A stretch of 64,000 bases of DNA. Source: Asterias rubens (lineage: Eukaryota). A program made the translations under genes and the position numbers. This document shows positions 4,536 to 46,371 of the stretch, piece after piece. The stretch lies in the NCBI RefSeq assembly GCF_902459465.1, contig NC_047064.1, forward strand, positions 2,418,001 through 2,482,000, in the 5' to 3' direction. Below the pieces are notes generated by a model. The model did not search any database, was not told the origin of the DNA, and saw only the letters and a list, made by a program, of their open reading frames with translations. Position 1 is the first letter of the stretch. Every line of letters begins with the position of its first letter.

Positions 4536-5956
4536 GGGAGTCAATAAAATTGGATGACTGGAGGGGAGGATCTGGGCATACTTGATGACAGTTTCAATGT
4601 TTTTATCACTGATTATTGTTGGAATATAATTTTTATATAAAAGAAATCCAAAATAATGTTAGTTTTGTAAGGAAAAACAAATCATATTATTTGCATCAAT
4701 GGCTTGTTTCTACCCGGTGACAAGGGCAAAGTGAAAGTTCAAAAATCTTTGATTGTTTTGGACTTTTCACTTCAAATGGTTTAAATAATAAACTGTTATT
4801 GCACAGGGGAGCATAAAGAAGTAAAGTGCTTTCAACTAAAAATAAAAAATAAAGCAAAACCAATTCTACAGGCTTTTTGAAATAAAAAAATGCTTGGTGT
4901 GAATTCATGTCTTCTGAAGGAAATGACAAAAGGTAACTGAAAACATAAACTTAAAAAGTATTTACAGATAAATTATAAAGTAATGAATTTCTTTGTACAA
5001 CAGTAACGAAAACCAAAATAATAAAACGGTAAGAACACAAGTCCAGATGAGCTAAAATAAAATATCAAGACATAAACCACAAGGGAACCTTGCTGGGTAA
5101 ATTTTAAAATATGTCGGGTTGGAACAAAGAAAAATTGACTTGAGCAGGACTTGAACTTGGTTGCCGCTTCCCAGGTTGCATCGTAAGCTTGGGTGTGATC
5201 CCTGGCTTCTTGACAGTCAACAATAAATTTGGCTTCTGACTGGCACCCCGAACAAAGATGGAGATTGCCAACATAGTGCTGGATAGCTCAGTTGGCAGAC
5301 TGATGATACAGTAATCCAGAGGTTGTTGGTTCATGTCCGGCTCCAGTCATTGTTTTTCTTTGTTCAAAGCAAAATATTATTCAAAAAATAATCTTGAGAA
5401 ATAGACAATACTACTCAGGTAGAGAAATCATTTAGGATATAGAGTAAAAGTACCTTCCTGAAGGTTAATTTGGCAATATTAATAAAGTCGTAATCTGACT
5501 AATAACAATGATGACAATATCAAATTGCAGTTTTTTTTATAGAAGGTTTAGTAAAAAGTCCTAAATCTGGCTTCACTTAATCTGCATAAATATGCGTATT
5601 ATTCCTGAAACAAACTTCACCATAAAAAAAACATAAGTCAGTTGGTTGCCTATGGCTAGGGTAACTTTCAATTTAAATTTTAAACTTTATTATCATTTTT
5701 CAATTTGATATAAAAGTTAGCATAAGTGAAAGTCAATGGTTAAATTTTCAAAGACATCTTCAGAATGATTTGTTCAACTCGTAACAAAATGTTTCGTTTG
5801 AGAGTGACTCTGCGTGCACAGTGGCCTTTTTTTAAAAAGGTAAATAACACAGTATTATTATTGTCATACAAATCATATTTTTGTGTCAACTTTTTCATTT
5901 CATAAAGATTCAAGAGTTTATTTGACAAATTTATGTACAGAATAATTTACACTTTA

Positions 5957-6028
5957 TCACCTTAGTCTTTTGCATCTTGTTTTCTGTTTCGATGATTTAG
6001 GCACTGGCTTCATTTTGCTTTCTTTGGC
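5957..6028 (-). CDS. MBD5: MBD5-like last coding exon (basic tail)
   Basis: ttgcag|AKESKMKPVPKSSKQKTRCKRLR-TGA, phase 0 as required. Confidence 0.7.
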   Translation of the reverse strand, partial: AKESKMKPVPKSSKQKTRCKRLR

Positions 6029-9000: not shown

Positions 9001-12000
9001 GTCTTTGAAATAACCGTATGCACCCACAGCAATTGCTGGTGCCCTGTGCTTTTGCTGTGGTGCCCTCTGCTTGCAAAGTTCCAACAAAAACTTGCATTTT
9101 CCCCATAGAAGTGCCCCTTATCAGAGGAAAATTGCTGTGCCCCTTCACGAGGGAAGTTCAAGGCCTGATGACCAACATGCAAAGATTTGAGAATCTTTTG
9201 TCTGCGGCGCTGTTTCAATTCATGCACCAATCCTGTTTTTAGAAAAATGTTGTGTCATACCTTTTTCACTTTGACATCCAAAACACTTTTAATAGCCAAC
9301 AATAAGCCATTTTTAGATATGATGAACACAATACTATGACACTATTTGGTTTAGTTAAATTTGTCTGTAGACACCCAAACCACACAGTGCAAACCTAAAA
9401 TGTCCACCATTTCTCAAAAAGGCTAATGTGCTTACCTGTTCGAACATTGCCACGTAGTACTCTTGTAGGTGCCTCCGTGGTCAGGCGTTCCTTCTTGAAC
9501 CCCGCCTCCTTGGCAGACATCATGCTCTTTGGTGTTTCCCCAATAGTCCTCTTTAAGATTGGCTCTCTCCTGACTGTACAGATCTCCTGCACTGATGGCT
9601 CCTCCACCAGAGGCGTGTTCTCTCTATTCTCCTGTTCGTCATCCAACCCCGACTGTCTACCTACACCAGCAACGTCGTCTTGGTTCAAGTGATCTGATGT
9701 CTGCCCTGCTAGAGAACCCACAGGAATATCATCCAAGCGCTGCGGTTCGACCAGCCCATTTGGTAAGCCGCTTTCTTTGTTTGAAGCTGGCTCAAATGGA
9801 CTGGATCTGTCTTTGAAAGGCTCAAGGGAGTTTTCGATAAGAGAATCAGATGCTTCGGCCATTTCACAGTGATTGAAGACTTCAGATGAAGAATCTCTTT
9901 CAATAGTGTCGAGACTTGATGGTCCGTTCGATGCACTTGGAGTTATTAAATCATCAAAAGACAACAGTTCTGATGTTGACTGGGTCGATATATCATCAGT
10001 CCCAAGTTCTTGGCTAGAATGAGTTGTTGGAGACAGTGGGCAGTCATCGCCAACTGCAGGCGATGGGCTACTTCTGTGAGCACCAGAATCACTCTCAGTG
10101 CTCGATAAATCAACTTGAATAGTTTCAAGAGGTTCGACCTCAGGTTTATCAATAGACTCCAATTTAGACTCCAATTCGACGTCAACTTCCTCGATGGATT
10201 TTTCTGGAGCCATTTCAGAATCTTCCTGCAAATCCGAGAGTAAAACATCAGCTGCTGTGTTTGACAAAGCTGGCGTACTTTTACTTTGAAATTCTGAATC
10301 AGCAGACGACATCCCACTCTCAAAATTACCCATGTCTTCATATGGCAAGCTCTCAGTGGATCTGTTGTTGTTTACATTATCCTCTCTTATGTTGTGATTT
10401 GTACGGAACACATTTTCGGAAACAGCTTCATCGACTTTCAACAACTCATTTTGATCCATCGCTTGAACATAAACCATACTGACTTGAACTGGTTCTTGTT
10501 CCTTTTCCAGCGGTTCATCTATTTTCTCTGCTTGAGGGCTCAGAGTAGATTGTCCACCCGTGTCAAAAACTTTTCTCTCTGGTTCCGTGTTGTCTAATTC
10601 TGAGAAACTCTGCTCCACAGATTCACAGCAACCCAAGCTATCTTGTATGTTAGGTTCATCATGCCCTGATGAGCTGTCTCGTTCAGTTTCCTCCAAGTGA
10701 TCTTGAGCAACCGTCTCGGTATTTTCTGCAGACTCTTCTACAGCTGCATCATGTAGCACCACGTGACTTTGCTGATCTTGTCCTAACCCAGATGTGTCCT
10801 CATCATTTTGTGACTCAATATCTACAGATGTGTCTTCCCCCTTTACTTCATGGTTCTCAACAAGGTGCGACTCTAACACAGTTGCTTCATCCAGATCGTT
10901 ACCTTTAACGGTTTCAAGCAAAGGGACTTGATCTAAATGTGTACTATCAGCTGGTTCAACTTCATCACCTTGTTCGCTCTGTTCACCTTCTTGACCAACT
11001 GGATTACTTTCATCGTTTTCCAGGAATGGATTTGTGTCATCTTCCACTGGTGCATTGCTCTCAGTTTCCTCTGGTTGATCATCAGTAACAAGATTTTGTT
11101 TGCCAAGTTCACTTACTGTTAAATGATCTCGAGTTACTGGTCCACTGTCTTGTTTCATAGAGTTACTGATTGTAGATTCGCTGTCCAACCGGACTGGCTG
11201 ATCCGCATGTAATGATTCACCTTCGTCCATTGGTTCAATGTTGTAGTCTTCTGGACACTGATGGCTGTCATCTCTCAAGTTCTCGCTCACAGCCTGTTCT
11301 CTATCCATTGGTTGCACTGAGGTTTTCACTTCTCCGCTTTGTTCAAGGTTCTGGGTGAGATTTGATTGTTCACGACTCGTTATGCAATCGTGGGTCATAT
11401 GTTCAGAGTCTACAGGTTGATCAGTCTCCAATGAATCATGGTCCATGAACTCATCTTCTGACTTTGAATTACCCTCTAACACTTGATCTACTGTCAATAC
11501 TTTATCGTTACTTGTAGATGGATCATAGCCTTCATCTTGCGTCATTGGTTCACTTTTTGATGCCTGGTCTTGTAGAAAAGGTTCACATTCCATCGTTGGA
11601 GCCGACATCACTGCTTCAGATTCAAATGAATGATCCTTTTCCAAAGGTTCACTTTCCGTTGCTCGATCTTGATGAAATGGTTCACAATCCATTACTAGAT
11701 CCTGCTTCACTGGTTCACACTCCATCGCTTGATCAAGCTTCACTGGTTCACACCTCGATGACTCATCGGGATTCACTGGTTCACACTCCGGAACTTGATC
11801 CTGCTTCACTGGTAAACAGTCTGATGATTGATCCGGATTCCCCGAGTCACAGTGTAATGATTCGTCCTGCTTCACTGGTTCACATTCTGGTAATTGATCC
11901 AGCTTTACTGGTGCACACTCCACTGATTGATCCTGCTTCACTGGTTCACACTTCAAAGGGTTGTCCTGCTTCACTTGTTCACAGTCTGATGATTGATCCT

Positions 12001-15000
12001 CCTTCACTGGTGCACGGTCTGAGGATTGATCCTGCTTCACTGGTACACATTTCAATGATTCATCCTGCTGAACTGGTGCACAGTCCACTGATTGATCCTC
12101 CTTCACTGGTTCGCACTCAGATGATTCAACCTGATTCACTAGTTCACACTCCGATAAATGATCTGGATGAACTGGTTCACAGTGTGATGATTGATTTAGC
12201 TTCACTTGTTCGCACTCTAATGATTGATCCTGCTTTAGTGATTCATAGCCCAATGATTGATTCTGCATCTCGGATTTAGACTCAAATCGTTCTTTCACTG
12301 GTTCACACTCCACTGACTGATCCTCATTCTCTGGTTCACAACTCGATGAGGGACTCTGTTTCTCTGGTTCACACTCCGACGATTGTTCCTCCTTCACTGG
12401 TTCACACTCCGGCGATTGTTCCTGTTTCACTGGTTCACAGTCCATTGCTTGATCCTTTTTCACCGGTTCAAGTTCCGATGGTTGCTTTTGTTTTACTGGT
12501 TCACAATCCAAAGATTCGCCCTGTTCTACTGGTTCACATTTTGATGGTCCATCCAACTTGACTGATTCACAATCCATTGATTGATCCTCCTCAACCAGTT
12601 GTTTGTCTATCGTTTCATTCCCTGGTTCACTGTCCATCGTTTCACCTTCCGTCATTGATTGAATGTCTTTTGATTGGTATTGCTCGGCTGGTTCACTCTC
12701 AATCGGTATAGTGTGTGTAGCTGTTTCACTGATCTTTTGGGTTTGCTGTTGATCTTTATCAGTTTTTCCTATAACAGAACCCATTGCCTGATCCTCCATG
12801 ACTGTTACCTCAGTGTCACTACCCTCTGAAGACTTGGGTTCTGTATGCTCTATAAGGCCGCCTGTTTCATCACTGCATTCCCCTAATGCTATGACAAGTA
12901 CTGTATCTTCCTGATCACTGGCATGATCATTCTCATGCTGGGACGCACTGTCTTCTCCCGAACACCAAGCATCAAGATCCCGCTGTACTTCAGCATCTGG
13001 TATCTCAGCTGTGGAAATGTTTAACGACAGATTACCTGAACTCATGTGGCTGTCTTCACCATGTAATGAACCCATATCGCTGCATGAACCAAATACTTCA
13101 GGAACTGTTTCAGGGGAAATTCTTGGCTCTTCAGTGGATTTTGGGACTGTATCCTTTAAAGATTGTTGAGGATCTTCTTCTTTACTGTCAGGATCTATAA
13201 CAACAAGGGAGGATTTTTGCTGCTCAGTACAACTGTCTGATGTGCAATCGTGATCCACTTGTTCACTTGTGGATGTATCAAGAGGTGTGGAACTCGTATT
13301 TGGTATTGCTTCATATGCAGTGAGTCTCTGTTCCTGTGATTTGCTGATTGCTTCCTCTGAAAGTCTTTTTGTCTGATATGAGACTTCAAACTCGTCAGTG
13401 TCCTCTTCGAATTCCAAATGAAGCTGACCTTCACCTGAATCTGTTACAGTACCATCTTCATTTTGGACAATCTCTGAACTCTTCTGATCATCAGCACATA
13501 TATTTGGTGATTGCAGGGTATCAGTTGATGCTGCAAGACTGAGAGTTTCTGTTGGTGTCTGTTGACTGTCGCTTAGTTCTACTAAGGGTTGGTTTGATAA
13601 TGTTTCTAATCCAGCACTCTCACAAGCTACCAGTTCATGTTCCACTGATGGGAAGACAGTTTGTTCAGGCACAGTGTTACAGACTTGGCGATCACCAACT
13701 ATTTCATCACAAGGAGATCTGATGCTTTGCACTTCTCTTAACTCTAAGACCGGAGAACAACTCTCTGATTCCAAAGTAGCTCCATCCTCGGATTTGGTGT
13801 CCATTGGAGTTATTGACATTTCTAGCACTGACTTTTCCTCAATCACAGTCATCCCTTCCCTATCTTTGTTATCCAGATAATTTGGGTTTGAAGAGCCAAG
13901 GTCTAACAAAGTGATTGCTGCATCCTTAGTTTCATCACTCTCTGCAAATTGAGATCCAGATTTGAAAGTTGTTTGCAAGTACTCTTTAGGAGTTTCTCTT
14001 TCATGCCCTGCCCCAGCATTCAGTTCTGTGTTTGGTGAGGAAATCTCTGATTTGTGTAGCTCCGATGGATCAGACAATTCAGCTGATACTTTCTTAACAT
14101 TTATGACGTTAGAGACTTCTGAAGTTTCTGAGGTAGGGATAGTTTCCTTTACAAGGGTCTTTTTTGAGTCGGATCCCTTCCCTTGGTCTGTGCTTCCCTG
14201 CTGCGCTCTTGTGCCTTCTTTAATGATGACCTTCATTCCACCGCTTGCAGAATCCAGAACAGCCTCAAAGATTGCTTCAACCTGTCCAGATTCACTGTTG
14301 TGTTTCTTTAATGACCTTGTCATTGCTAGTATGTCTTTCACTTTCTTCACTCCACCTACTTTAGAAGCTGCCTTCACCCAGTAAGCAGCATCCTTTGGCT
14401 CTTCGTCATCAAGGTCCACAACAGGGGTACCACCTGTTGATGAGCCTCCTGTACTCTTCAAAACCTTTGTAGTTTTTCTGCGCTGTGATGATGTTCCGGA
14501 TTTGTGAGTAGCAGACCCATGTTGGTGAGTTTTAGTCAAATTTACCACATCTGGGAATTGTTTCATTGGCATGGATGGTTCTCCGTGGCACACTTGTTTC
14601 ATACCAGGATGGTGAAAGTTACCCGGAGGTATTCCCAACTGCTGGAGATGTTGCTGTTGTTGCTGCTGTAGCATTGATTGTAAAATGTTACTATTACACA
14701 TATTTGCACCCTGTTGGATCTTAGGATCTATCTGTTCTACCGGTGTATCCAGTCTGAAAGGCCTTGGCATTCCACGCGGGTGTTGCATTACATTCATCTT
14801 AGGATGCACGAATTGTGGATTGATAAAGCGATTTGGAAACTGATGTGTCTGGGCATAGTTGGGATGCTGTTGCATACCTGGCATCCTGGGAAAAGGGCCA
14901 CCACCCATGGCAATGTGTTGGAGCTCCTGTAGACCTCTTGACCTAATGTGGGGAAGTCCCATCTGTGGATCTGTTGGGAATTGCTCAATTTGTGAAACAT

Positions 15001-18000
15001 TTCCGGTACCGTGTTGTTGATTTGCTCTGATCATGGCTGCGCACCATTCCTGCTGCTTTTTTAACCTGGCTAACTCATCCACTGATTGATGCTCACCCAG
15101 GTTTGTTGATTTTCCGGTCGAACACACAACATTGTATGAGCCTGTTACCTTGGTCGACTCATACTGGTGCATTAGGAAAAGTCTGTCCGTGTTCATCTCA
15201 GGCACTTTGTGAGTTGATAAAGCAACTTCTGATTGTATTGTCTCAGATTCAACAGAGGCACGTCCATGTGAGCTGTCACTACTGTGTAATCGCGGTCTCT
15301 TGGTCCAGCCATCGATGGCATCCTCAATGCTCTTTGTGTTTATTCTCTTTCGCTCAGGAGAAAAAGTTGCGCCTTCTGGAAAGGGAACTACGTTCGCTAC
15401 GTGAGGCTGGTCTTCTAAATTGAGTACAGCATTCTCCAGGCACTGTATTGGGGACTCACTGATATTCTCAACGGCAGATGTGCTACCTTCACTGCTGGTC
15501 TCAGTTGCCACAGCAGCGTCAGAGAGTTTTAATGATTCCACACTTTGCTTTCTCTTTGCGCTTATCTGTGAAGGTGCTATTTCATGTTTCGAGCTGTCCG
15601 GTGTTACGTTAGGCGTGTTGTCGTTAAATAAGCCCATACCAGACATCAGGTCGCCTGCATGATGGGGTGCAGGACTTTCAGGAGGTTGAGATTGCTTTGC
15701 TGATTGGGCTTTAGCTGCAGCTGAAAGTAGACTACTTGCTGGGAAGGCACTTCCTTCAAGTGACTGGTTAAATATTTCTTGCAGTGATATATTACCAACT
15801 GGAAGTTTTGGATCTGTTTTTGTGTTGTGCATAGAGCTGGACTTGATGCTATAAGTCGGGTTGCTGTCTTTTGGGGTGACTGAGGTGCTCATTTTATCTG
15901 CTTTAGATTTGTCCACAGGTTTTGTTGACTCAATTGGTGCAGCTTCTTCCGAGTCCTGGCCAGGTACAACAAGGCTCTTTTTCGACCGGTCTTGCATATA
16001 GAAGGCCACATCATTTCTATTGGCAAACAAGGCTGGATTATTGCTCATATTAGCAGCAGTCGAGGAAGCCCTGTTTTGATTATGGTACATGTTGCTGAGT
16101 AATGGAATCACGCTCGGAGAACATCCATCCAGGTGCATGCCGACCATATTCTGTCCGTCCACAACAGGCCCATGTACCTCCCCATGAAAGGGGAATGAGA
16201 AGGAACCATGGTTATGGAGTGTTTGCATTTCATTTGGACTGACGGTAAGTTCACCGCTTGATCCGCTTCTTTTTCTCGACCTTGAAACAGTGTTGTGTGG
16301 ACTTGCAGCAGTAGGTGTGTTCTGTGGTGCTACCTCAGCACCTCGGGTAAACGGTATGTTCGGACAGCGAAGGGTTGGGCTCGAGTGTAGCACCCTTCCG
16401 TCCCAATGTTCAACAGAGCACTGATCAATAGGCGAATGGAGAGATTCCTGGCTTCCCCTGCGTGGGGATGCCTGGCGTGTAAGCTGCTGGTGGTGAAGCA
16501 GAAGCTGCTGCTGCTGGTGCTGCTGCATAAGCTCCTGATGCTGCATGTGCAAGAAGCGCATCTGAGCCTGTCTCTGATGTGACTCGAGGCTGTGCTGCTG
16601 CTGATGCAAGCGATGATCATAAGGGATGGATTCCATTGAAGGCATATGTTTGGTGATGTTTTGCGGATGGTGCTGGTGCCTGCCTTGTTGTAGTGCTAAG
16701 ATCTGCGACACTGAAAGGTTGGGATACTGAAAATCACCGCCAGTCTCGGGTTTCGACTTTGACCTTGCCCTCTTCACTCCTGCTGCATAAAAAACAACAC
16801 AGTAGGAATTTTAGAACAGACCTAGTAAAAGTTACACATCCAATATTCTGTTGACTACTCCTTGGAATTTTCACTTTTTAGAAAAAAGAAAAGAAAAAAA
16901 ATTCATTCAAAAGCATTGTGAACAAATCTAAAGCATACAGTATATACCTTTAAGATTATTTGACAAAACATTTTAATGTACAACCGCACTTTCAACAACC
17001 TGAATTGGGTCATTTTGAGATCATGACATATTGTGTTTAGTAAAAAAAGTTTAGTGTTGAAATGTTTTTCATGACTGCCTAAGGAAAAAACCCCACACCC
17101 AAACACAACAACTTTAGACTTGTTAGGATCACACTAAGTTGGCATTCCATACATATCTCTTTTCTCTTGCTTGGCTTTATCGACAAGTCTTTACAGTGCA
17201 AATTGGTTTTTTTACAATTGAATAGTATGAAATCTGTTAAATCTGTTAAAGTTGATGACAATTAGCATTTTTTGATTCATGTTTTTAATGCCCAGGCTAC
17301 AACTGTAGCAATTTATTATTGCATGGTTTAATAGTGTAACCTTCTTTTGCGATTTTTAATGATACTTTGTTTTTAATTATTCATAAAAAATAAAGAAAAT
17401 TAATAACCAATTTTGTTTATAAATAACCCACTAATTTGTTTTTTTAATTTATTTGCTTTATTTTATTTTCCTTATTTTAATATAGTGGAGGGGAAGAGAG
17501 ACAGGCAACAAGAGAGTGTGATAAATCTTGTCTCTATTAGTTAAAAGGAAGGTACATATTTGGTAATGAAAGCACACAAATTCGTCCAACAAGGGTGTTT
17601 TTTCTTTCATCATTTTCTCGCAACTTCGATGACCAATTGAGCTCAAATTTTCACAGGGTTTTATGCTTATGTTGGGATACACCAAGTGAGAAGACTGGTC
17701 TTTGACAATTACCAAATGTGTTCAGTGCCTAATGAAACTTAAAAAAAATTCAACTTGGAGACTAATACACATGTATACATGTGCATTATGCATAAACAAA
17801 TACTAAACTGTACTCATTGCCATAAAATTACAATACAATACTAGTAAACAGGTATCAAAGTCAAACATCAAAATATCTGATACCGACCTTTGCTTCTCCC
17901 AGGCGCTGCCAAGCCTCCCCCAGGCGGACCGATGTTTGTCAGGCTCTCCTCGTTCCCCTGAAGCCCCGCTGCCATGGCAACTAACTTATGTCTATGCTTG

Positions 18001-36524: not shown

Positions 36525-36640
36525 CCACATGGAGATAACCCAGCTCAGTTGATAGAGCGCCGGCACGTTAAACCGGAGGTCGTAGGTTCAAATCCCGCTC
36601 TAGTCAATTTTTCTTTGTTCAATCCAAAATCATTTATTTT
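36525..36640 (+). mobile_element. tRNA-derived SINE-like repeat
   Basis: cagctcagttgatagagcgccggcacgttaaaccggaggtcgtaggttcaaatcccgctctagtcaat. Confidence 0.75.
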
Positions 36641-37393: not shown

Positions 37394-37981
37394 ATGAATT
37401 CCAGTGCGTCTGTCTTCCTTCAAGAAAATGAGCTGGCTATCGAGATGCTCATCAACGAGCCAAGAGAGTTCGATCGCTTCCACGACTACTTCGGTCTTGC
37501 CCGCCTCGTCACTCCAGCTACTCCCGTCTCCAAGCCATTCGTCACTCAAGCTGCTCCCGTCTCCGAGCCACACTTACTCCTGGAACATGGTCAAGAAATG
37601 AAGCAAGATCAAGAATTCACGAAAGACACCGGGTTCCGTCCCTTTACCATCGACGAGCTGTCCCGAGAAAACCGTCCACAGCAAGCAAACCGCTGGGTGG
37701 TTCCCAAGCCGACATGGTGCGTCTTCTGCAAGAATAACGGCGAGAGCGAAGAGGTGTACACATCCCATGTACTAAAGAACAGCCTTGACGTGGTTGCCTG
37801 TCCCAGGCTACGAGCTTACACCTGTCCACTGTGTGGTGTCAACGGAGACACCGCACACACCGTCAAGTATTGCCCATCCAACCTCGGCAGCCTTCATCCA
37901 GCTCCGGTCAAGATTCAACCTCTTGGGGTGTACTTGAGCAGCAAGTTCATCCCCTCTGCAGGAACCAGAATTTCCGTCTGA
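37394..37981 (+). CDS. nanos: Nanos homolog copy A (195 aa, intronless)
   Basis: NOT1-interacting motif-like FDRFHDYFGLARLV and two CCHC fingers CVFCKNNGE..YTSHVLK..CPRLRAYTCPLCG..AHTVKYCP. Confidence 0.96.
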   Translation: MNSSASVFLQENELAIEMLINEPREFDRFHDYFGLARLVTPATPVSKPFVTQAAPVSEPHLLLEHGQEMKQDQEFTKDTGFRPFTIDELSRENRPQQANRWVVPKPTWCVFCKNNGESEEVYTSHVLKNSLDVVACPRLRAYTCPLCGVNGDTAHTVKYCPSNLGSLHPAPVKIQPLGVYLSSKFIPSAGTRISV

Positions 37982-38006: not shown

Positions 38007-38043
38007 GGCTCTTCTCAGAGCCAACACATATTCAAAAAAGAGA
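38007..38043 (+). other. Histone-mRNA-type 3' processing signal (16-nt stem-loop + HDE-like element) in nanos A 3'UTR
   Basis: ACACC-GGCTCT-TCTC-AGAGCC-AACACA..AAAAAAGAGA; stem 38007-38022, 25 nt after the stop; AAAGAGA at 38037-38043. Confidence 0.78.
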
Positions 38044-38765
38044 TTTGTCATGTCTGTCTAAATAAATTTTACAATAAATAGATTATAAGGATCATACCAT
38101 TAAAATAATTAAATGCTTTAACTTTACATCGGGGATGGACTACAGCCAAGACACATAACATAATATTTATTATTACATTATGAAAAAAAATAATGCCGGG
38201 TATAGTAAACTCTGGGCTGCTTTCAATCAGTAAATGTGTGAGAGGGGTTGGCCTTTGAGGGCGGGGGTTACAAAAAGCAACATTAGAGCAAACAAGGGAC
38301 ACAATAGTTTGGGGAACATCATGAATTTAGCAGGATGTACCGTAAGTTTTTTCTTCAATTTTCTTACACCCCATTCTTTGATCTATTTTGGGGGGAAACT
38401 TGCAGGACCCCCGCTATTCCCACAAAAAAAAATTGCATTGACACAATTTTTACATCATTAACTTTTTTTTCTTCCAACCTGTTTAACCATGGTTTAACAC
38501 GCTGCATATTTTGGACGATTGCATCCATTGTTATGCCGGGTGAGTTCTCTTCGGGGCATTTCCCTTTCATGATGTCCCCAACCTATTCAAGCCTTGACTT
38601 CGTATCGTGCCGTCTTCTCGTAATTTGATAAAAACGAGATAACAAACAACATTTCCATTTGTTGCATATTGCTTATTACTGGTATTCAGCTGTTGTTATT
38701 TAAAAGCAATGATCAATGCAAGTTTTTATTCGAAAGCGTAAATAAATGACTGAGCAGCGGCAGAA

Positions 38766-39269
38766 TTTAAAGGCAGTGAACACTATTGGTAAGTGCCAAA
38801 GACAAGCCTTCACAGTTGGTTTATCTCAACATATATGCATATAAATAACAAACCTGTGAAAATTTGAGCTCAATCGGTCATCAAAGTTGCGAGATAATAA
38901 TGAAAGAAGTTGTCACACGAAGTTGTGTGCGTTTAGTTCTAAACTTGAGGTCTCGAAATCAAATTCGTGGAAAATTACTTCTTTCTCGAAAACTATGGCA
39001 CTTCAGGGGGAGCCGTTTCTCACAATGTTTTATACTGATTTTTGGGGTTGAACAAAGAATTGACTAGAGTGGGATTCGAACCAACGACCTCCGGATTAAC
39101 GTGCCGGCGCTCTACCAACTGAGCTATCTAGCCCTATATTGGCGGTGTCCCTATTTTGTCAATATCTTTGTTCGGGGTGCCATACTATACTGTCAACCTC
39201 TCCCCATTACTCGTCACCAAGAAAGGTTTTATGCCAATAATTATTACCAATAGTGTCCACTGCCTTTAA
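38766..39269. mobile_element. MITE family A copy with nested tRNA-like SINE (about 39046-39185)
   Basis: MITE body interrupted after tatact and resumes after tatactatactg; duplicated at 43785-44287. Confidence 0.85.
39046..39185 (-). mobile_element. tRNA-derived SINE-like repeat (cloverleaf head 39133-39061)
   Basis: A-box TAGCTCAGTTGGTAGAGC and B-box GGTTCGAATCC, with a shared non-tRNA tail. Other copies at about 5075-5390, 34700-34800, 36525-36640, 42885-43055 and 44064-44203. Confidence 0.8.
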
Positions 39270-39443
39270 GTGCATGTAAACCCTTCTTGTTTTACAATTA
39301 GTTCCCTTTATATTGACAGTTCAATTGAAATAATTCATCTCAAAATACTTTTACGATAATGATTCAGACTAATTTCCCGTCCACACTCTAAACAAACTCG
39401 CAAAATTTATAAACAAACCGACGAACAAGATTCCTACGTCTGT

Positions 39444-39606
39444 GCAAAGTAATGGTTGACGTAGGCACATTTGCTACATAAATGTTTTCGGTTGCAATTT
39501 TGTCCAGATCAAAACTTTGCGAGCGAAAGTTACAAAGTAATGGTTGACGTAGACATAAATGTTTTCGGTTGCAATTTTGTCCAGATCAAAACTTTGCGAG
39601 CGAAGG
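39444..39606. repeat. Short direct duplication (about 70-80 bp)
   Basis: aaagtaatggttgacgtag..cataaatgttttcggttgcaattttgtccagatcaaaactttgcgagcgaa occurs twice; repeated in the second 5-kb unit. Confidence 0.85.
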
Positions 39607-39643
39607 TTAAATCACAGGAGGGCGGTATTCCGAGAAAGACCGT

Positions 39644-39795
39644 GGGTGCGTTCGTTTAGCTTCCCTGGGTCATCCCCTGTGTGTGACGGTTTTTTTTTCC
39701 AGGACAAACGTGGGTAATTATCTGCACACGTTCGTCCTGGAAAAACAAGTCGTCACACAACGGGGTCGACCCAGGGAAGCTAAACGAACGCACCC
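39644..39795. mobile_element. Small palindromic MITE (TIR GGGTGCGTTCGTTTAGCTTCCCTGGG)
   Basis: Long inverted repeats; duplicate at 44662-44813 and a partial copy at 1-107. Confidence 0.8.
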
Positions 39796-40708
39796 TGGCT
39801 TTATGGAACCAAGTCTTTAAAATTACAGACAAAGTTACATGAAACCCCGGTTTAATAAAAGACTTCGCACGACTTCCACTGGGCTCCTTATTCATAATTA
39901 ATTTCAAGTAGCCTATGTTAATATAACCGGCAATGTGGGAGGGGGTTGGCATTTGGGAAGACGGGAAATTACAAACATTTAAAATTAGAGCAAACAATAA
40001 ACCCTCTAGCTTGGGTGGATAATAAGGGAAAAGCATAATATTGGGACGCGTTCACCGTAACTTTTTTCTTCAATTTTCATCCGTACCCCAAAGGTTTTTA
40101 CATACAATTCCCCCCCCCTCCGGGAAATTTGCATTTCGAAGACCTCCCCCACCTCTCGCTATTCCCACGTACATTGCATTGAAAACACAGAATTAACTTT
40201 TTTGCAACCTGATTTCCCTGTCCTTACTCTATGATTTCAGGAACTGGACACAATTGGTAGTTACTCAAAAAATTGTTAGCATAAAAACTTAATTGTTATT
40301 GATAAATGGAGAGCTGTTGATAAAATAAAACATTGTAAGAAACGGCTCCCTCTGAAGTATCGTAGTTTTCGAAAAAGAGTAACTTTCCACTAAAATAATT
40401 TGTTTATTTGATCTCGAGACCTCAGACCATGGAGCAATTGCTCCATGCTCAGACCCACCCGTACGACTGCCGATCCATCTGAATAAGAAGAAGGACTAAC
40501 GACACCTTTTTTTTTTTTTTAATCATTGTCGGTCGTATTCTATGTGACCCACAAGTTAGAAAGGGGTAGCCAATGGTAACTTAAAAGTGGTGCGTTTATA
40601 AGTTTTGCTCGTCAGAACTGTTTTGAAATCACACTAACTTATATTATTTGTATTCTTTAAAATCGTTATTTGCTTTATTATTTTAAATAATTAGGCAGAC
40701 ATGGCAGA

Positions 40709-40745
40709 TCTCTTTTTGGAATATGTGTTGGCTCTGATAAGAGCC
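40709..40745 (-). other. Histone-mRNA-type stem-loop + HDE-like element in nanos B 3'UTR
   Basis: Minus strand AAACC-GGCTCT-TATC-AGAGCC-AACACA..AAAAAGAGA; stem 40745-40730, 25 nt after the stop. Confidence 0.72.
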
Positions 40746-40770
40746 GGTTTGAACGCTGGTCATCTTGGAG

Positions 40771-41349
40771 TCAGACGGAAATTCTTATTCCTGTAGATGA
40801 GATGAATTTGTTGTTCAAGTAGACCCGAAGAGGTTGAATCTTGACCGGAGCTGGATGAAGGCTGCCGAGGTTGGACGGGCAATACTTGATGGTGTGTGCG
40901 GTGTCTCCGTTGACACCACACAGTGGACAGGTGTAAGCTCGTAGCCTGGGACAGGCAACCTTGTCAAGGCTGTTCTTCAGTACATGGGATGTATACATCT
41001 CTTCGCTCTCGCCGTTATTCTTGCAGAAGACGCACCATGTCGGCTTGGAAACCACCCAGCGGTTTGCTCGCTGTGGGCGGCTCTCTCGGGACAGCTCATC
41101 GATGGTGAAGGGACGGAATCCGGTGTCTGTACTACTGTCTTGATCTTGCTTCATATCTTGACCATCTTTCGGGACGAAGTGTGGCTCGGAGACGGGAGCA
41201 GCTTGTGTGACGAATGGCTCGGAGACGGGAGTGACGAGGCGGGCAAGACCGAAGTAGTCGTGGAAGCGATCGAACTCTCTTGGCTCGTTGATGAGCATCT
41301 CGATGGCCAACTCATTTTCTTGAAGGAAGACAGACCCGCTGGAATTCAT
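40771..41349 (-). CDS. nanos: Nanos homolog copy B (192 aa, intronless)
   Basis: Same NIM and CCHC fingers; about 24 substitutions plus a 3-aa indel versus copy A by manual alignment. Confidence 0.96.
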   Translation of the reverse strand: MNSSGSVFLQENELAIEMLINEPREFDRFHDYFGLARLVTPVSEPFVTQAAPVSEPHFVPKDGQDMKQDQDSSTDTGFRPFTIDELSRESRPQRANRWVVSKPTWCVFCKNNGESEEMYTSHVLKNSLDKVACPRLRAYTCPLCGVNGDTAHTIKYCPSNLGSLHPAPVKIQPLRVYLNNKFISSTGIRISV

Positions 41350-42129
41350 CTTGCATATAAATTTTAGCTTAAGACTGAGAGATGACTTGATGTGAACTGA
41401 TTGCGGGGCAAATCAAATGTGATGACCACTCACTAAACGGCCACACATTTTTATCCATAACGTCTTGGTTCGGGTTGGTGTTTGAAGACAATAGGGACTC
41501 CTCGATGGCGGTGAGATAAGACAGTCTCACCTTCTTATTGATACCATTGATCCCTGGCCGCAGTCAATGCATGATTGCTCCCGATGGGGGCTTGGTTGGA
41601 ACACGGTCGGAACTACTGAGGCGCATGGCTGAATGGGATGGTAATGACCAAAGCCCACAACCTGCCACGAGCCAGTGATTCCAAGAAGTGGCTATAGTTA
41701 GGACTTCTTCAAAGACGAGCCGGCAAACTTGTTAACCAACAAAAGGGAGTAATAAAGCAATCTTGGATATGAAAGACTAAATCAATGACATGATTGGGTC
41801 TTAACTCATCTGAAAAAAACCCCAATAGGCCTACATCAAAGATTGTTATCAAGCCTACTTCGACTATCTTTGCGCAGGAGATGATCAGCGGACTTGAAAC
41901 GGGCGGGAACTCCTTCCCGTTTTTGTGGCGAAAATCCCCTAAATACGAAATATTTATGTACGGAATAACTTACCGTTTGGTATTATAAAGTGAACTAACT
42001 GGTTAAAGTAAGCTACCATAGACTCAGAAAAATGTGAGCGTTCTTTTTGCATTGTCAATCGGTATTGACACAATATCTTTGTTCGGGGTGCCAGTCAGAA
42101 GCCATACAACCGTTAACTGCCGTTTTTTT

Positions 42130-42885
42130 GTTCTTAATCTGAAGCCAAGGACTCACTTAACGGTAGATCATTTCAAACAAGTTGGTTGGCTCCCAGTCCA
42201 GAACCGGATTGATCAATTGAAACTATGTAGTATATTTCGTATCTTGACTTCCTTGGCTCCGGATTATTTTAAAGATTTTTTTCAACTGACAAGTAGTACT
42301 CGCTTCTATAACACCCGATCAAATCACTTTTCTTTTGATATTCCCCATCATCACAGTTATGGTCAACACTCCTTCCGAGTTTCTGGGGCAAAGTTATGGA
42401 ATAAACTTCCCATCATGCTCCGGAACACAAATTCATCCCTAGCCAAATTTAAAAAAACTCTCAAACTGCATTACTTTGATAAGTTGCAGCTCCAGGAGGA
42501 TGCATTGTTTGTAGTCGGTTAATTTATTCTTTTTTTTCATTAGAACAGTACTCGTGGTGACACAGTGGCCGGGCCAGGTGACACGAATCAATTTGTTTGT
42601 TGTTGGGTGTCTTGGTCGCCTATTCCATTTGTTTTATTTCATGTGCAATTTTCTAGTCATAGTTTTATACTTGTATTTTAATGTGTCTTCAGTGTTTCTG
42701 CATTTTTATTTTGTATAGAGGACCACAATGGAAATAAGCTTATTTCAGCTTTTTTGTGTTATCCTCGACAATTCCTCAGATTCAAATGTCTTTTCCCTTG
42801 TATTTTTTATCTGTTTTTGTCCAATTGTTGTATTTTAAAGAATTCTGTGGAGATTGTCTAATAAACAAACAAACAAACAAAGCCA
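42130..42885 (+). mobile_element. LINE (L2/Crack-like) 3' fragment with (ACAA)n tail
   Basis: GWLPVQNRIDQLKL..SFRVSGAKLWNKLP..FKKTLK, then a 3'UTR ending aataaacaaacaaacaaac; duplicated at about 47156-47911. Confidence 0.8.
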
Positions 42886-45730
42886 GGGATCACACCCAAA
42901 TTACGATACAACCTGGGAAGCGGCAGCCAGGGGATCACCTTAAGGGGATGCGACTTTTTGTTTCAGATATCAATGTAAACCACAAGGGAAACTGACTGGG
43001 TAAATTTTGAAATGATTTTTGGGGTTGAACAAAGAATTGACTAGAGTGGGATTCACACTATGGAGCTGGTCACATAAATCTTATTTTCAATGTTTAAAGC
43101 ATGTTTAAACATGGAAGAAGGACGGTGTGGGTCTAACTTTTTTTGACACAACGAGTGACGTTACGAAACTTTTGGCACAACCCTCATAGATAAATGGTCA
43201 ACAGATGGCGCACTTGTTTTTCGTTCGGATATGATTCAAAGGATTTTTAATTGAGTGTTTTGAAGTGTCGTTTCGCTAGATACTGATGTACATGTATAAC
43301 TATTGTAAAACAAAACAAGAAAAACTAAATTAAAGTCAATTGAACTACTTACGACGGAATTGTGGACAAGCATTACTTTTCTTACACCCCATTCTTTGAT
43401 CTATTTTGGGGGGAAACTTGCAGGACCCCCGCTATTCCCACAAAAAAAAATTGCATTGACACAATTTTTACATCATTAACTTTTTTTTCTTCCAACCTGT
43501 TTAACCATGGTTTAACACGCTGCATATTTTGGACGATTGCATCCATTGTTATGCCGGGTGAGTTCTCTTCGGGGCATTTCCCTTTCATGATGTCCCCAAC
43601 CTATTCAAGCCTTGACTTCGTATCGTGCCGTCTTCTCGTAATTTGATAAAAACGAGATAACAAACAACATTTCCATTTGTTGCATATTGCTTATTACTGG
43701 TATTCAGCTGTTGTTATTTAAAAGCAATGATCAATGCAAGTTTTTATTCGAAAGCGTAAATAAATGACTGAGCAGCGGCAGAATTTAAAGGCAGTGAACA
43801 CTATTGGTAAGTGCCAAAGACAAGCCTTCACAGTTGGTTTATCTCAACATATATGCATATAAATAACAAACCTGTGAAAATTTGAGCTCAATCGGTCATC
43901 AAAGTTGCGAGATAATAATGAAAGAAGTTGTCACACGAAGTTGTGTGCGTTTAGTTCTAAACTTGAGGTCTCGAAATCAAATTCGTGGAAAATTACTTCT
44001 TTCTCGAAAACTATGGCACTTCAGGGGGAGCCGTTTCTCACAATGTTTTATACTGATTTTTGGGGTTGAACAAAGAATTGACTAGAGTGGGATTCGAACC
44101 AACGACCTCCGGATTAACGTGCCGGCGCTCTACCAACTGAGCTATCTAGCCCTATATTGGCGGTGTCCCTATTTTGTCAATATCTTTGTTCGGGGTGCCA
44201 TACTATACTGTCAACCTCTCCCCATTACTCGTCACCAAGAAAGGTTTTATGCCAATAATTATTACCAATAGTGTCCACTGCCTTTAAGTGCATGTAAACC
44301 CTTCTTGTTTTACAATTAGTTCCCTTTATATTGACAGTTCAATTGAAATAATTCATCTCAAAATACTTTTACGATAATGATTCAGACTAATTTCCCGTCC
44401 ACACTCTAAACAAACTCGCAAAATTTATAAACAAACCGACGAACAAGATTCCTACGTCTGTGCAAAGTAATGGTTGACGTAGGCACATTTGCTACATAAA
44501 TGTTTTCGGTTGCAATTTTGTCCAGATCAAAACTTTGCGAGCGAAAGTTACAAAGTAATGGTTGACGTAGACATAAATGTTTTCGGTTGCAATTTTGTCC
44601 AGATCAAAACTTTGCGAGCGAAGGTTAAATCACAGGAGGGCGGTATTCCGAGAAAGACCGTGGGTGCGTTCGTTTAGCTTCCCTGGGTCATCCCCTGTGT
44701 GTGACGGTTTTTTTTTCCAGGACAAACGTGGGTAATTATCTGCACACGTTCGTCCTGGAAAAACAAGTCGTCACACAACGGGGTCGACCCAGGGAAGCTA
44801 AACGAACGCACCCTGGCTTTATGGAACCAAGTCTTTAAAATTACAGACAAAGTTACATGAAACCCCGGTTTAATAAAAGACTTCGCACGACTTCCACTGG
44901 GCTCCTTATTCATAATTAATTTCAAGTAGCCTATGTTAATATAACCGGCAATGTGGGAGGGGGTTGGCATTTGGGAAGACGGGAAATTACAAACATTTAA
45001 AATTAGAGCAAACAATAAACCCTCTAGCTTGGGTGGATAATAAGGGAAAAGCATAATATTGGGACGCGTTCACCGTAACTTTTTTCTTCAATTTTCATCC
45101 GTACCCCAAAGGTTTTTACATACAATTCCCCCCCCCCTCCGGGAAATTTGCATTTCGAAGACCTCCCCCACCTCTCGCTATTCCCACGTACATTGCATTG
45201 AAAACACAGAATTAACTTTTTTGCAACCTGATTTCCCTGTCCTTACTCTATGATTTCAGGAACTGGACACAATTGGTAGTTACTCAAAAAATTGTTAGCA
45301 TAAAAACTTAATTGTTATTGATAAATGGAGAGCTGTTGATAAAATAAAACATTGTAAGAAACGGCTCCCTCTGAAGTATCGTAGTTTTCGAAAAAGAGTA
45401 ACTTTCCACTAAAATAATTTGTTTATTTGATCTCGAGACCTCAGACCATGGAGCAATTGCTCCATGCTCAGACCCACCCGTACGACTGCCGATCCATCTG
45501 AATAAGAAGAAGGACTAACGACACCTTTTTTTTTTTTTTTTTAATTATTGTCGGACGTATTCTATGTGACCCACAAGTTAGAAAGGGGTAGCCAATGGTA
45601 ACTTAAAAGTGGTGCGTTTATAAGTTTTGCTCGTCAGAACTGTTTTGAAATCACACTAACTTATATTATTTGTATTCTTTAAAATCGTTATTTGCTTTAT
45701 TATTTTAAATAATTAGGCAGACATGGCAGG

Positions 45731-45767
45731 TCTCTTTTTGGAATATGTGTTGGCTCTGATAAGAGCC
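45731..45767 (-). other. Histone-mRNA-type stem-loop + HDE-like element in nanos C 3'UTR
   Basis: Same as B; stem 45767-45752, purine element 45737-45731. Confidence 0.72.
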
Positions 45768-45792
45768 GGTTTGAACGCTGGTCATCTTGGAG

Positions 45793-46371
45793 TCAGACGG
45801 AAATTCTTATTCCTGTAGATGAGATGAATTTGTTGTTCAAGTAGACCCGAAGAGGTTGAATCTTGACCGGAGCTGGATGAAGGCTGCCGAGGTTGGACGG
45901 GCAATACTTGATGGTGTGTGCGGTGTCTCCGTTGACACCACACAGTGGACAGGTGTAAGCTCGTAGCCTGGGACAGGCAACCTTGTCAAGGCTGTTCTTC
46001 AGTACATGGGATGTATACATCTCTTCGCTCTCGCCGTTATTCTTGCAGAAGACGCACCATGTCGGCTTGGAAACCACCCAGCGGTTTGCTCGCTGTGGGC
46101 GGCTCTCTCGGGACAGCTCATCGATGGTGAAGGGACGGAATCCGGTGTCTGTACTACTGTCTTGATCTTGCTTCATATCTTGACCATCTTTCGGGACGAA
46201 GTGTGGCTCGGAGACGGGAGCAGCTTGTGTGATGAATGGCTCGGAGACGGGAGTGACGAGGCGGGCAAGACCGAAGTAGTCGTGGAAGCGATCGAACTCT
46301 CTTGGCTCGTTGATGAGCATCTCGATGGCCAACTCATTTTCTTGAAGGAAGACAGACCCGCTGGAATTCAT
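45793..46371 (-). CDS. nanos: Nanos homolog copy C (192 aa, intronless)
   Basis: Identical to B except one V/I change (PFVTQ/PFITQ). Confidence 0.94.
   Translation of the reverse strand: MNSSGSVFLQENELAIEMLINEPREFDRFHDYFGLARLVTPVSEPFITQAAPVSEPHFVPKDGQDMKQDQDSSTDTGFRPFTIDELSRESRPQRANRWVVSKPTWCVFCKNNGESEEMYTSHVLKNSLDKVACPRLRAYTCPLCGVNGDTAHTIKYCPSNLGSLHPAPVKIQPLRVYLNNKFISSTGIRISV

What the first reader, a model, noticed from the sequence alone, without database searches (positions are those of the whole stretch)
40700..45775. The histone-type signal is retained in nanos B and C, with change confined to the tolerant loop position
Seen: B (40745-40709) and C (45767-45731) carry GGCTCT-TATC-AGAGCC-AACACA..AAAAAGAGA at the same 25-nt and 14-nt spacings as A. 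The 12 stem nucleotides, loop U1/U3/C4, the AACACATATT tail and AAAGAGA are invariant between A and B/C. The spacer before the stem has several substitutions (gaacatcgtttacacc vs gaccagcgttcaaacc), and only loop position 2 differs (C vs A). Inference: this pattern suggests selection on the SLBP-recognised features. The UCUC vs UAUC loops might also tune SLBP affinity between paralogs.
Basis: partly seen in the sequence, partly recalled or inferred. Interest (0 to 1): 0.8.

Follow-up and report, generated by a model that had tools for sequence, protein, structure and literature searches.

The report
Histone-type mRNA ending on starfish nanos
Two more copies of a sea star germ-cell gene (nanos) carry the RNA ending that normally marks only histone genes, and every sea star nanos gene examined has it too, so it is kept by selection, although no RNA data yet show the cell uses it.

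Summary
Nanos B and C (minus strand) each carry GGCTCT-UAUC-AGAGCC 25 nt after the stop codon, then AACACATATT, with AAAGAGA 14 nt after the stem, as in copy A (loop UCUC). B and C belong to one 5.0-kb tandem duplicate, so they count as one witness.

A versus B alone does not show selection: 2/37 versus 8/45 differences, p about 0.1. Species comparison does.
- In 12 sea-star nanos 3' ends (at least 4 named species), all 12 stem bases and loop positions 3 and 4 never change.
- Flanks are 33-47% identical; invariant columns 14/16 versus 5/105, p=2e-12.
- Loop position 2 shows all four bases. Loop position 1 changed once (A in Acanthaster).
- The UCUC and UAUC types, with their own spacers, are each shared with another species, so both predate that split.

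Brittle star, urchin, sea cucumber and a second sea-star nanos lineage lack the signal.

Published assays show position 2 (U to C) does not alter SLBP binding but weakens 3'hExo binding. "SLBP tuning" is therefore unlikely.

No RNA evidence could be obtained. AATAAA lies 51 nt downstream, and a Patiria study reports a longer 3'UTR, so dual ends remain possible.

The scan already reported copy A on this same window (s1-170776).

The parts
40771..41349 (-). nanos B coding sequence (192 aa, intronless; coordinates include the stop codon)
   Evidence: ORF. Pfam zf-nanos E=2e-24. 84% identical to the Asterias amurensis protein named nanos homolog 2-like.
40746..40770 (-). B-type 25-nt spacer between the stop codon and the stem
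   Evidence: It has 4 differences from A. It is 23/25 identical to the Logan contig L006 of another species, which also has the UAUC loop.
40730..40745 (-). B histone-type stem-loop: 6-bp stem GGCUCU/AGAGCC with loop UAUC
   Evidence: Rfam Histone3 32.7 bits, E=7e-8; centroid fold.
40709..40729 (-). B 3' flank AACACAUAUUCC followed by the purine box AAAAAGAGA (HDE-like). It contains AAAGA, the complement of the universal UCUUU box of U7.
   Evidence: The universal U7 box is from PMC5054213.
40674..40679 (-). AATAAA hexamer 51 nt after the B stem; a possible poly(A) signal for read-through transcripts
   Evidence: The same offset is seen in A and C, and +56 in A. amurensis L001.
45793..46371 (-). 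nanos C coding sequence (192 aa), the tandem duplicate of B
   Evidence: (1 nt difference from B in the coding sequence).
45752..45767 (-). C histone-type stem-loop, loop UAUC
45731..45751 (-). C 3' flank and purine box, identical to B. The first B/C difference is the base just after AAAGAGA (T in B, C in C).
45696..45701 (-). AATAAA hexamer 51 nt after the C stem
37394..37981 (+). nanos A coding sequence (195 aa), the paralogue convergent with B
   Evidence: It forms a 559-nt inverted repeat with B/C at 90%.
38007..38043 (+). A stem-loop (loop UCUC), AACACAUAUUC flank and AAAAAAGAGA box; the reference copy for the comparison
   Evidence: Rfam Histone3 39.7 bits, above the gathering score. The 16-mer equals a human histone stem-loop listed in PMC7807067.

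Best explanation
Nanos B and C carry intact copies of a complete histone-type 3'-end signal: a stem-loop 25 nt after the stop codon, an A(A/G)CA flank and a purine box 14 nt further on. A sea-star-specific nanos lineage acquired this signal once, and purifying selection has kept it since (shown). The most likely mechanism is inferred, not shown. SLBP binds the stem-loop on the nascent nanos transcript. U7 snRNP pairs through its UCUUU box with the AAAGA-containing box. CPSF73 then cuts a few bases after the stem, giving a nanos mRNA that ends in the stem-loop and has no poly(A) tail. A read-through polyadenylated form may exist beside it, as for H2A.X. The B/C loop difference (position 2, U/C to A) lies at the one stem-loop position that SLBP does not read. 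It is an old, paralogue-specific state. Any functional effect would more plausibly fall on 3'hExo trimming or decay than on SLBP affinity.
For: The element is present at exact spacings in A, B and C. Rfam Histone3 gives 39.7 and 32.7 bits. All 12 sea-star nanos 3' ends have an invariant stem and invariant loop positions 3 and 4; these are the window x3, A. amurensis x2, Patiria miniata x2, Acanthaster planci x2, Logan L006, ENA L007 and Tara L008-L014. Mean pairwise identity is 0.94 in the stem-loop and 0.76 in the flank plus purine box, against 0.47 upstream and 0.33 downstream. Invariant columns are 14/16 versus 5/105, p=1.7e-12. The core AAGAG is invariant, and AAAGA, the complement of the universal U7 box UCUUU (PMC5054213), is present in 11 of 12. 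The copies bearing the stem-loop form one clade with 100/100 support. The sea-star nanos1-like lineage, brittle star, urchin and sea cucumber nanos have no Histone3 match within 3 kb. The five 3'UTR sites that distinguish A from B, loop position 2 among them, sort A with A. amurensis L001 and B with L006, so both loop types predate that species split. In histone genes the stem-loop typically sits 23-31 nt after the stop and is followed by a purine-rich element (bioRxiv 10.64898/2026.10.14.759114). Loop positions 1 and 3 determine SLBP binding, while a U-to-C change at position 2 binds like wild type and lowers 3'hExo affinity (PMC4604434).
Against: There is no RNA evidence. The four runs laid cover intergenic DNA evenly and behave as low-coverage DNA. 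RNA-labelled runs of the same species label hold almost none of the sampled words. AATAAA lies 39-56 nt after the stem in the asteriid copies. A 10x (oligo-dT) study of P. miniata had to lengthen the PmNanos 3'UTR annotation (bioRxiv 10.1101/2022.02.04.479164), so polyadenylated read-through transcripts probably exist. B and C score below Rfam's gathering threshold. A at loop position 2 is absent from the human histone stem-loop list in PMC7807067. The sea star's own U7 and its histone downstream elements were not available for comparison.
Confidence: 0.6

Rival explanations
1. The stem-loop is an internal element of an ordinary polyadenylated nanos 3'UTR. It binds SLBP, or an oocyte-type SLBP paralogue or another protein, for storage or translational control, and U7 does not cut there.
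For: AATAAA lies 51 nt after the stem in A, B and C and at +56 in A. amurensis L001. The PmNanos annotation needed a longer 3'UTR for oligo-dT-primed 10x reads. Nanos is detected in sea star single-cell data (PMC13407887).
Against: The purine box is conserved at a fixed distance and carries the complement of the U7 UCUUU box in 11 of 12 copies. Binding of the hairpin alone would not require that. P. miniata and A. amurensis nanos3-like copies have no AATAAA or ATTAAA within 400 nt. Histone genes themselves often have downstream poly(A) sites used only on read-through (PMC7807067).
Confidence: 0.25
2. The identity between A and B/C is not selection. It reflects recent duplication and gene conversion, and the hairpin is a neutral relic.
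For: A versus B alone is not significant: 2/37 versus 8/45, p=0.10. B and C are a very recent tandem duplicate. Synonymous divergence between A and B (0.157) is lower than to the orthologue-like copies (0.276-0.284), and site patterns in the coding sequence are mosaic, which suggests conversion.
Against: The stem is invariant in 12 copies from at least four named species of two orders, while the flanks are unalignable. Type-specific differences lie on both sides of the hairpin, so no recent conversion tract explains its identity.
Confidence: 0.04
3. The loop difference (UCUC in A, UAUC in B/C) is adaptive and sets different SLBP affinities for the paralogues.
For: Each loop type is kept in a second species together with its own spacer.
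Against: A U-to-C change at loop position 2 binds SLBP like wild type; positions 1 and 3 are the determinants; position 2 contacts 3'hExo (PMC4604434). Position 2 shows U, C, A and G, with at least four changes in the clade, like an unconstrained site.
Confidence: 0.1

Closest known systems
3'-end processing signal of replication-dependent histone genes (Rfam RF00032 Histone3: stem-loop plus histone downstream element; SLBP, U7 snRNP, CPSF73)
   Same: It has a 6-bp GGCUCU/AGAGCC stem and a 4-nt loop with U at positions 1 and 3. It has an A-rich 5' flank and an ACA-type 3' flank. It lies 25 nt after the stop codon. A purine box with AAAGA follows about 14 nt after the stem. The A 16-mer is identical to a human histone stem-loop.
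   Different: The gene encodes Nanos, a germ-line zinc-finger RNA-binding protein, not a histone. Histone mRNAs are described as the only known cellular mRNAs without poly(A), and SLBP bound no other RNA in HeLa cells (PMC4604434). B and C have A at loop position 2 and fall just below Rfam's gathering score. Use of the signal has not been shown.
H2A.X (H2AFX) hybrid gene with dual 3' ends (PMC7807067)
   Same: A stem-loop and downstream element are followed by a poly(A) signal, so one gene can give both a stem-loop-ended and a polyadenylated mRNA. AATAAA lies about 50 nt after the nanos stem in the asteriid copies, and Patiria shows hints of a longer 3'UTR.
   Different: H2A.X is still a histone. 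Neither isoform has been demonstrated for nanos. The Patiria copies have no canonical hexamer within 400 nt.
Sea urchin nanos2 3'UTR control (the GNARLE element; named from my own knowledge, not read here)
   Same: In both cases the 3'UTR of an echinoderm nanos mRNA carries the information that controls its stability or retention.
   Different: The urchin nanos locus examined (Lytechinus variegatus, L017) has no histone-type stem-loop. The sea-star element is a different kind of signal.

Membership tests
Histone-type 3' processing signal (RF00032 stem-loop plus downstream element) | 6-bp stem with G-C at the second pair, and a 4-nt loop with U at positions 1 and 3 | tested here: met
   B and C: GGCUCU-UAUC-AGAGCC. 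A: loop UCUC.
Histone-type 3' processing signal (RF00032 stem-loop plus downstream element) | Score at or above the Rfam gathering threshold (34 bits) | tested here: not met
   B scores 32.7 bits (E=7e-8 in a 301-nt search), and C is the same sequence over the element. A meets the threshold at 39.7 bits. Orthologues score 23-39 bits.
Histone-type 3' processing signal (RF00032 stem-loop plus downstream element) | Position shortly after the stop codon (typically 23-31 nt) | tested here: met
   25 nt in A, B and C.
Histone-type 3' processing signal (RF00032 stem-loop plus downstream element) | Purine-rich downstream element at a fixed distance, complementary to the 5' region of U7 snRNA | tested here: inconclusive
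   AAAGAGA lies 14 nt after the stem and holds AAAGA, the complement of the universally conserved U7 box UCUUU. The core AAGAG is invariant in 12 copies. The sea star's own U7 and its histone downstream elements could not be obtained.
Histone-type 3' processing signal (RF00032 stem-loop plus downstream element) | The mature mRNA ends a few bases after the stem and lacks poly(A) | not testable with these tools
   The only read-laying run returned DNA-like contigs. RNA-labelled runs held almost none of the locus.
Histone-type 3' processing signal (RF00032 stem-loop plus downstream element) | Sequence of the stem conserved for protein recognition, not only its pairing | tested here: met
   12/12 stem bases are identical in 12 copies. 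There is no compensatory change and no break, while the flanks are 33-47% identical.
Replication-dependent histone gene | Encodes a core or linker histone | tested here: not met
   Pfam finds only zf-nanos. The nearest named proteins are sea star nanos homologues.
Hybrid gene with dual ends (H2A.X type) | A poly(A) signal downstream of the stem-loop and downstream element, with both isoforms made | tested here: inconclusive
   AATAAA at +51 in B and C and at +39 and +51 in A. The isoforms were not observable. A longer PmNanos 3'UTR is mentioned.

The most novel reading that the evidence does not exclude
Sea-star nanos mRNAs are truly processed by SLBP and U7 into tail-less, stem-loop-ended messages. 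That would make them the first non-histone mRNA class known to use the histone pathway. The paralogue-specific base at loop position 2 (U, C, A or G) would set how readily 3'hExo trims or degrades each paralogue's mRNA. Such an mRNA would also escape the deadenylation that Nanos itself recruits.
Probability: 0.4. Interest if true: 0.85.

Novelty: new variant of a known kind. Interest (0 to 1): 0.62.

Why it matters
Histone mRNAs are described as the only cellular mRNAs that end in a stem-loop instead of a poly(A) tail (PMC4604434), and SLBP is thought to serve them alone. Here a germ-line determinant has kept the complete signal across sea-star orders. If the signal is used, the histone pathway has been recruited for a developmental regulator. 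That would tie nanos mRNA stability and translation to SLBP, to oocyte storage or to S phase, rather than to poly(A) length. It would also make nanos mRNA immune to CCR4-NOT deadenylation. Sea stars specify germ cells by induction, so this may be part of how nanos is restricted there. The natural series of loop variants (UUUC, UCUC, UAUC, UGUC, AUUC) on one conserved stem is a ready-made panel for separating SLBP recognition from 3'hExo recognition.

Tried and rejected
- RNA evidence: both run searches returned runs of unknown kind. The four best, laid in the single read-laying run, covered intergenic stretches evenly at low depth and repeats at enormous depth. They are therefore DNA and say nothing about 3' ends. 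The RNA-labelled runs held about none of the locus.
- Logan contig L006 ends 11 nt after the stem. This is neither the expected cleavage site nor a poly(A) site, and the run type is unknown, so no inference was drawn.
- A versus B substitution contrast: computed and found not significant, so it was dropped as evidence in favour of the multi-species test.
- Covariation: none is possible because the stem never varies, so pair counting was not run.
- Origin from the hammerhead-plus-histone-stem-loop repeats that the scan noted elsewhere in this genome: no hammerhead or other Rfam family lies near the nanos genes, and the sequence look-up was blank. This was not pursued.
- A GGTTCT-CTAA-AGAACC palindrome 2 kb upstream of the brittle star nanos is a chance match. 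It has no ACA flank, is not in the 3'UTR and has no Rfam hit.
- Literature strings for a UAUC histone loop: none found.
- Papers linking nanos with the histone stem-loop or SLBP: none found.
Full report
**What is there**

The window holds three intronless genes whose products match only the Pfam Nanos zinc-finger domain (E about 1e-24).
- A is at 37394-37981 on the plus strand.
- B is at 40771-41349 on the minus strand.
- C is at 45793-46371 on the minus strand.

The nearest named proteins are sea star nanos homologues: Asterias amurensis at 84%, and Patiria miniata and Acanthaster planci at 57-62%.

B and C sit in the two units of a tandem duplication with a 5,018-5,026-bp period. Their coding sequences differ by one base. 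A and B/C form a convergent inverted repeat of 559 nt at 90% identity.

**Check of the observation**

- B (40745-40730) and C (45767-45752) read GGCTCT-TATC-AGAGCC. A (38007-38022) reads GGCTCT-TCTC-AGAGCC.
- The stop-to-stem distance is 25 nt in all three.
- AAAGAGA begins 14 nt after the stem in all three.
- The stem, loop positions 1, 3 and 4, AACACATATT and AAAGAGA are identical.
- Loop position 2 differs (C versus A). The spacer has four substitutions.

The motif occurs three times in the window and never in 100 shuffles. Rfam's Histone3 model scores A at 39.7 bits, above its gathering score of 34. It scores B at 32.7 bits, just below, with E=7e-8 in the local search. The hairpin is the centroid structure of each 69-nt stretch.

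**Is it more than shared ancestry of recent paralogues?**

On A versus B alone the answer is no.
- The 37-nt element has 2 differences and the other 45 alignable UTR bases have 8 (Fisher p=0.10).
- Against the synonymous difference of the coding sequences (pS 0.141), the binomial probability of 2 or fewer is 0.09.
- B and C add nothing independent.

I fetched the DNA around sea star nanos homologues. Every one has the same hairpin a few tens of bases after its stop codon.

| Copy | Loop |
|---|---|
| A. amurensis nanos2-like | UCUC |
| A. amurensis nanos3-like | UUUC |
| P. miniata, two copies | UUUC |
| A. planci, copy a | AUUC |
| A. planci, copy b | UUUC |
| Logan contig L006 | UAUC |
| ENA contig L007 | UGUC |
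| Tara Oceans contigs L008-L014 | UAUC |

- In all 12 copies the 12 stem bases and loop positions 3 (U) and 4 (C) are invariant.
- The 3' flank is AACA in 11 copies and AGCA in one.
- The purine core AAGAG is invariant.
- In an alignment of nine independent copies, 14 of 16 stem-loop columns are invariant, against 5 of 105 flank columns. Three of those five are the stop codon. Fisher p=1.7e-12.
- Mean pairwise identity is 0.94 in the stem-loop and 0.76 in the flank plus purine box. It is 0.47 upstream and 0.33 downstream.

**Age and history of the two loop types**

The five UTR sites that separate A from B are four in the spacer plus loop position 2. At all five, A groups with the A. amurensis copy L001, whose spacer is 25/25 identical. 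B groups with L006, at 23/25. Both UTR types therefore existed before those species split, and each has been kept since.

The coding sequences tell a different story.
- Synonymous divergence between A and B is 0.157.
- It is 0.276 between A and L001, and 0.284 between B and L006.
- Site patterns in the coding sequence are mixed.

This suggests gene conversion between the paralogues that stopped short of the 3'UTR.

The identical A-type spacer across species, at pS 0.23, also means the spacer is not simply free to drift.

**Extent of the signal among echinoderms**

In a protein tree the copies bearing the stem-loop form one clade with 100/100 support on a long stem branch. No Histone3 match at E of 1 or less was found within 3 kb of four other nanos genes:
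- a second sea-star nanos lineage (A. amurensis nanos1-like, L015);
- brittle star (Amphiura, L016);
- urchin (Lytechinus, L017);
- sea cucumber (Holothuria, L018).

The single pattern hit in L016 is a chance palindrome 2 kb upstream of the gene. The signal was therefore gained once, in a sea-star-specific nanos lineage.

**The loop**

Position 2 takes all four bases. Given the tree, it changed at least four times. Position 1 changed once, to A in Acanthaster. "Change confined to position 2" is therefore true for A versus B/C but not for the whole clade.

Published binding assays explain the pattern (PMC4604434).
- Loop positions 1 and 3 determine SLBP binding.
- The U-to-C change at position 2, which gives the UCUC loop found naturally in human HIST1H2BI, binds SLBP like wild type.
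- Position 2 is the main cross-link site of the 3'hExo nuclease, and the change lowers that enzyme's affinity.

The A 16-mer is one of the human histone stem-loops listed in PMC7807067. No loop with a purine at position 2 is in that list. The data fit a site that is free with respect to SLBP. If the paralogue difference does anything, 3'hExo is the likelier target than SLBP.

**How it most likely works**

Three things are shown: a complete histone-type signal, at the histone-typical place, under strong purifying selection.

The mechanism is inferred. SLBP binds the hairpin. U7 snRNP pairs with the purine box. That box contains AAAGA, the complement of the universally conserved UCUUU box of U7 (PMC5054213), in 11 of 12 copies, and GAAGA in the twelfth. 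Cleavage after the ACA flank would give a tail-less nanos mRNA.

Evidence against exclusive use of the signal:
- AATAAA lies 39-56 nt after the stem in the asteriid copies.
- A 10x study of P. miniata lengthened the PmNanos 3'UTR annotation, which points to polyadenylated read-through transcripts.
- A dual mode as in H2A.X (PMC7807067) is the natural reconciliation.

I could not get RNA evidence. The runs laid were DNA, and the RNA-labelled runs lacked the locus.

**Comparison with what is known, and novelty**

The element works like, and by sequence is, a histone stem-loop and downstream-element signal. The gene is not a histone gene.

Histone mRNAs are described as the only cellular mRNAs without poly(A), and SLBP CLIP in HeLa cells found no other target (PMC4604434). 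My searches found no paper linking nanos to this signal.

The same scan already reported the A copy on this window and stated that other sea stars share it (s1-170776). I re-derived that independently. This report adds:
- the statistics;
- the correction that the A versus B comparison alone is not significant;
- the ancient origin of the UCUC and UAUC types;
- the position-1 exception in Acanthaster;
- the 3'hExo reading of position 2;
- the limits of the clade.

**Verdict**

Selection is supported. The SLBP-tuning idea is not supported. Use of the signal for processing is likely but unproven.

Noticed in passing
window 39061-39133 and 44079-44151 (minus strand); L004 4605-4679; L005 4897-4969: A tRNA gene lies about 1-1.6 kb downstream of the nanos stem-loop in three sea stars. 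It is tRNA-Asn(GTT) in the window, once per tandem unit, but tRNA-Ala(AGC) in Patiria and Acanthaster. A degenerate tRNA-like match is at 36542-36598.
   Followed up: partly
window 38500-39340, 39505-39840 and 40173-40506: The stretches between nanos A and B reach word depths of 1e4 to 4e6 in low-coverage DNA runs of several organisms, so they are very high-copy dispersed repeats. Many contigs skip about 155-170 bp around the tRNA-Asn gene (39029-39196), as if the tRNA sits inside, or interrupts, a repeat family.
   Followed up: no
window 38023: Contigs of two DNA runs (X10 of organism A, X3 of organism B) lack one A directly after the stem of nanos A, giving ACACA instead of AACACA. This is the only listed variant inside any of the three elements.
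   Followed up: no
window 37394-37981 versus 40771-41349: The A and B coding sequences are closer to each other (dS 0.157) than to their UTR-defined orthologues in other species (dS 0.28), and informative sites are mosaic. This suggests gene conversion between the convergent paralogues that spares the 3'UTR.
   Followed up: partly
L005 3619-3634 (plus strand) and 5951-5966 (minus strand): Acanthaster has two nanos 3' ends facing each other 2.3 kb apart with a tRNA between them, the same convergent layout as A and B in the window. The second gene is cut by an assembly gap.
   Followed up: partly
window 9395-16777 (minus strand): This is a single open reading frame of 2,460 aa, rich in Ser, Glu, Gln and Asp, with no Pfam match. 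It is probably a giant disordered exon of an unidentified gene.
   Followed up: partly
window 38062-38078; A, B, A. amurensis L001 and L002 about 25-33 nt after the stem: The motif CATGTCTG follows the purine box in all asteriid copies, including the divergent nanos3-like one, but not in Patiria or Acanthaster. It could be an extended U7 pairing site or a second element.
   Followed up: no
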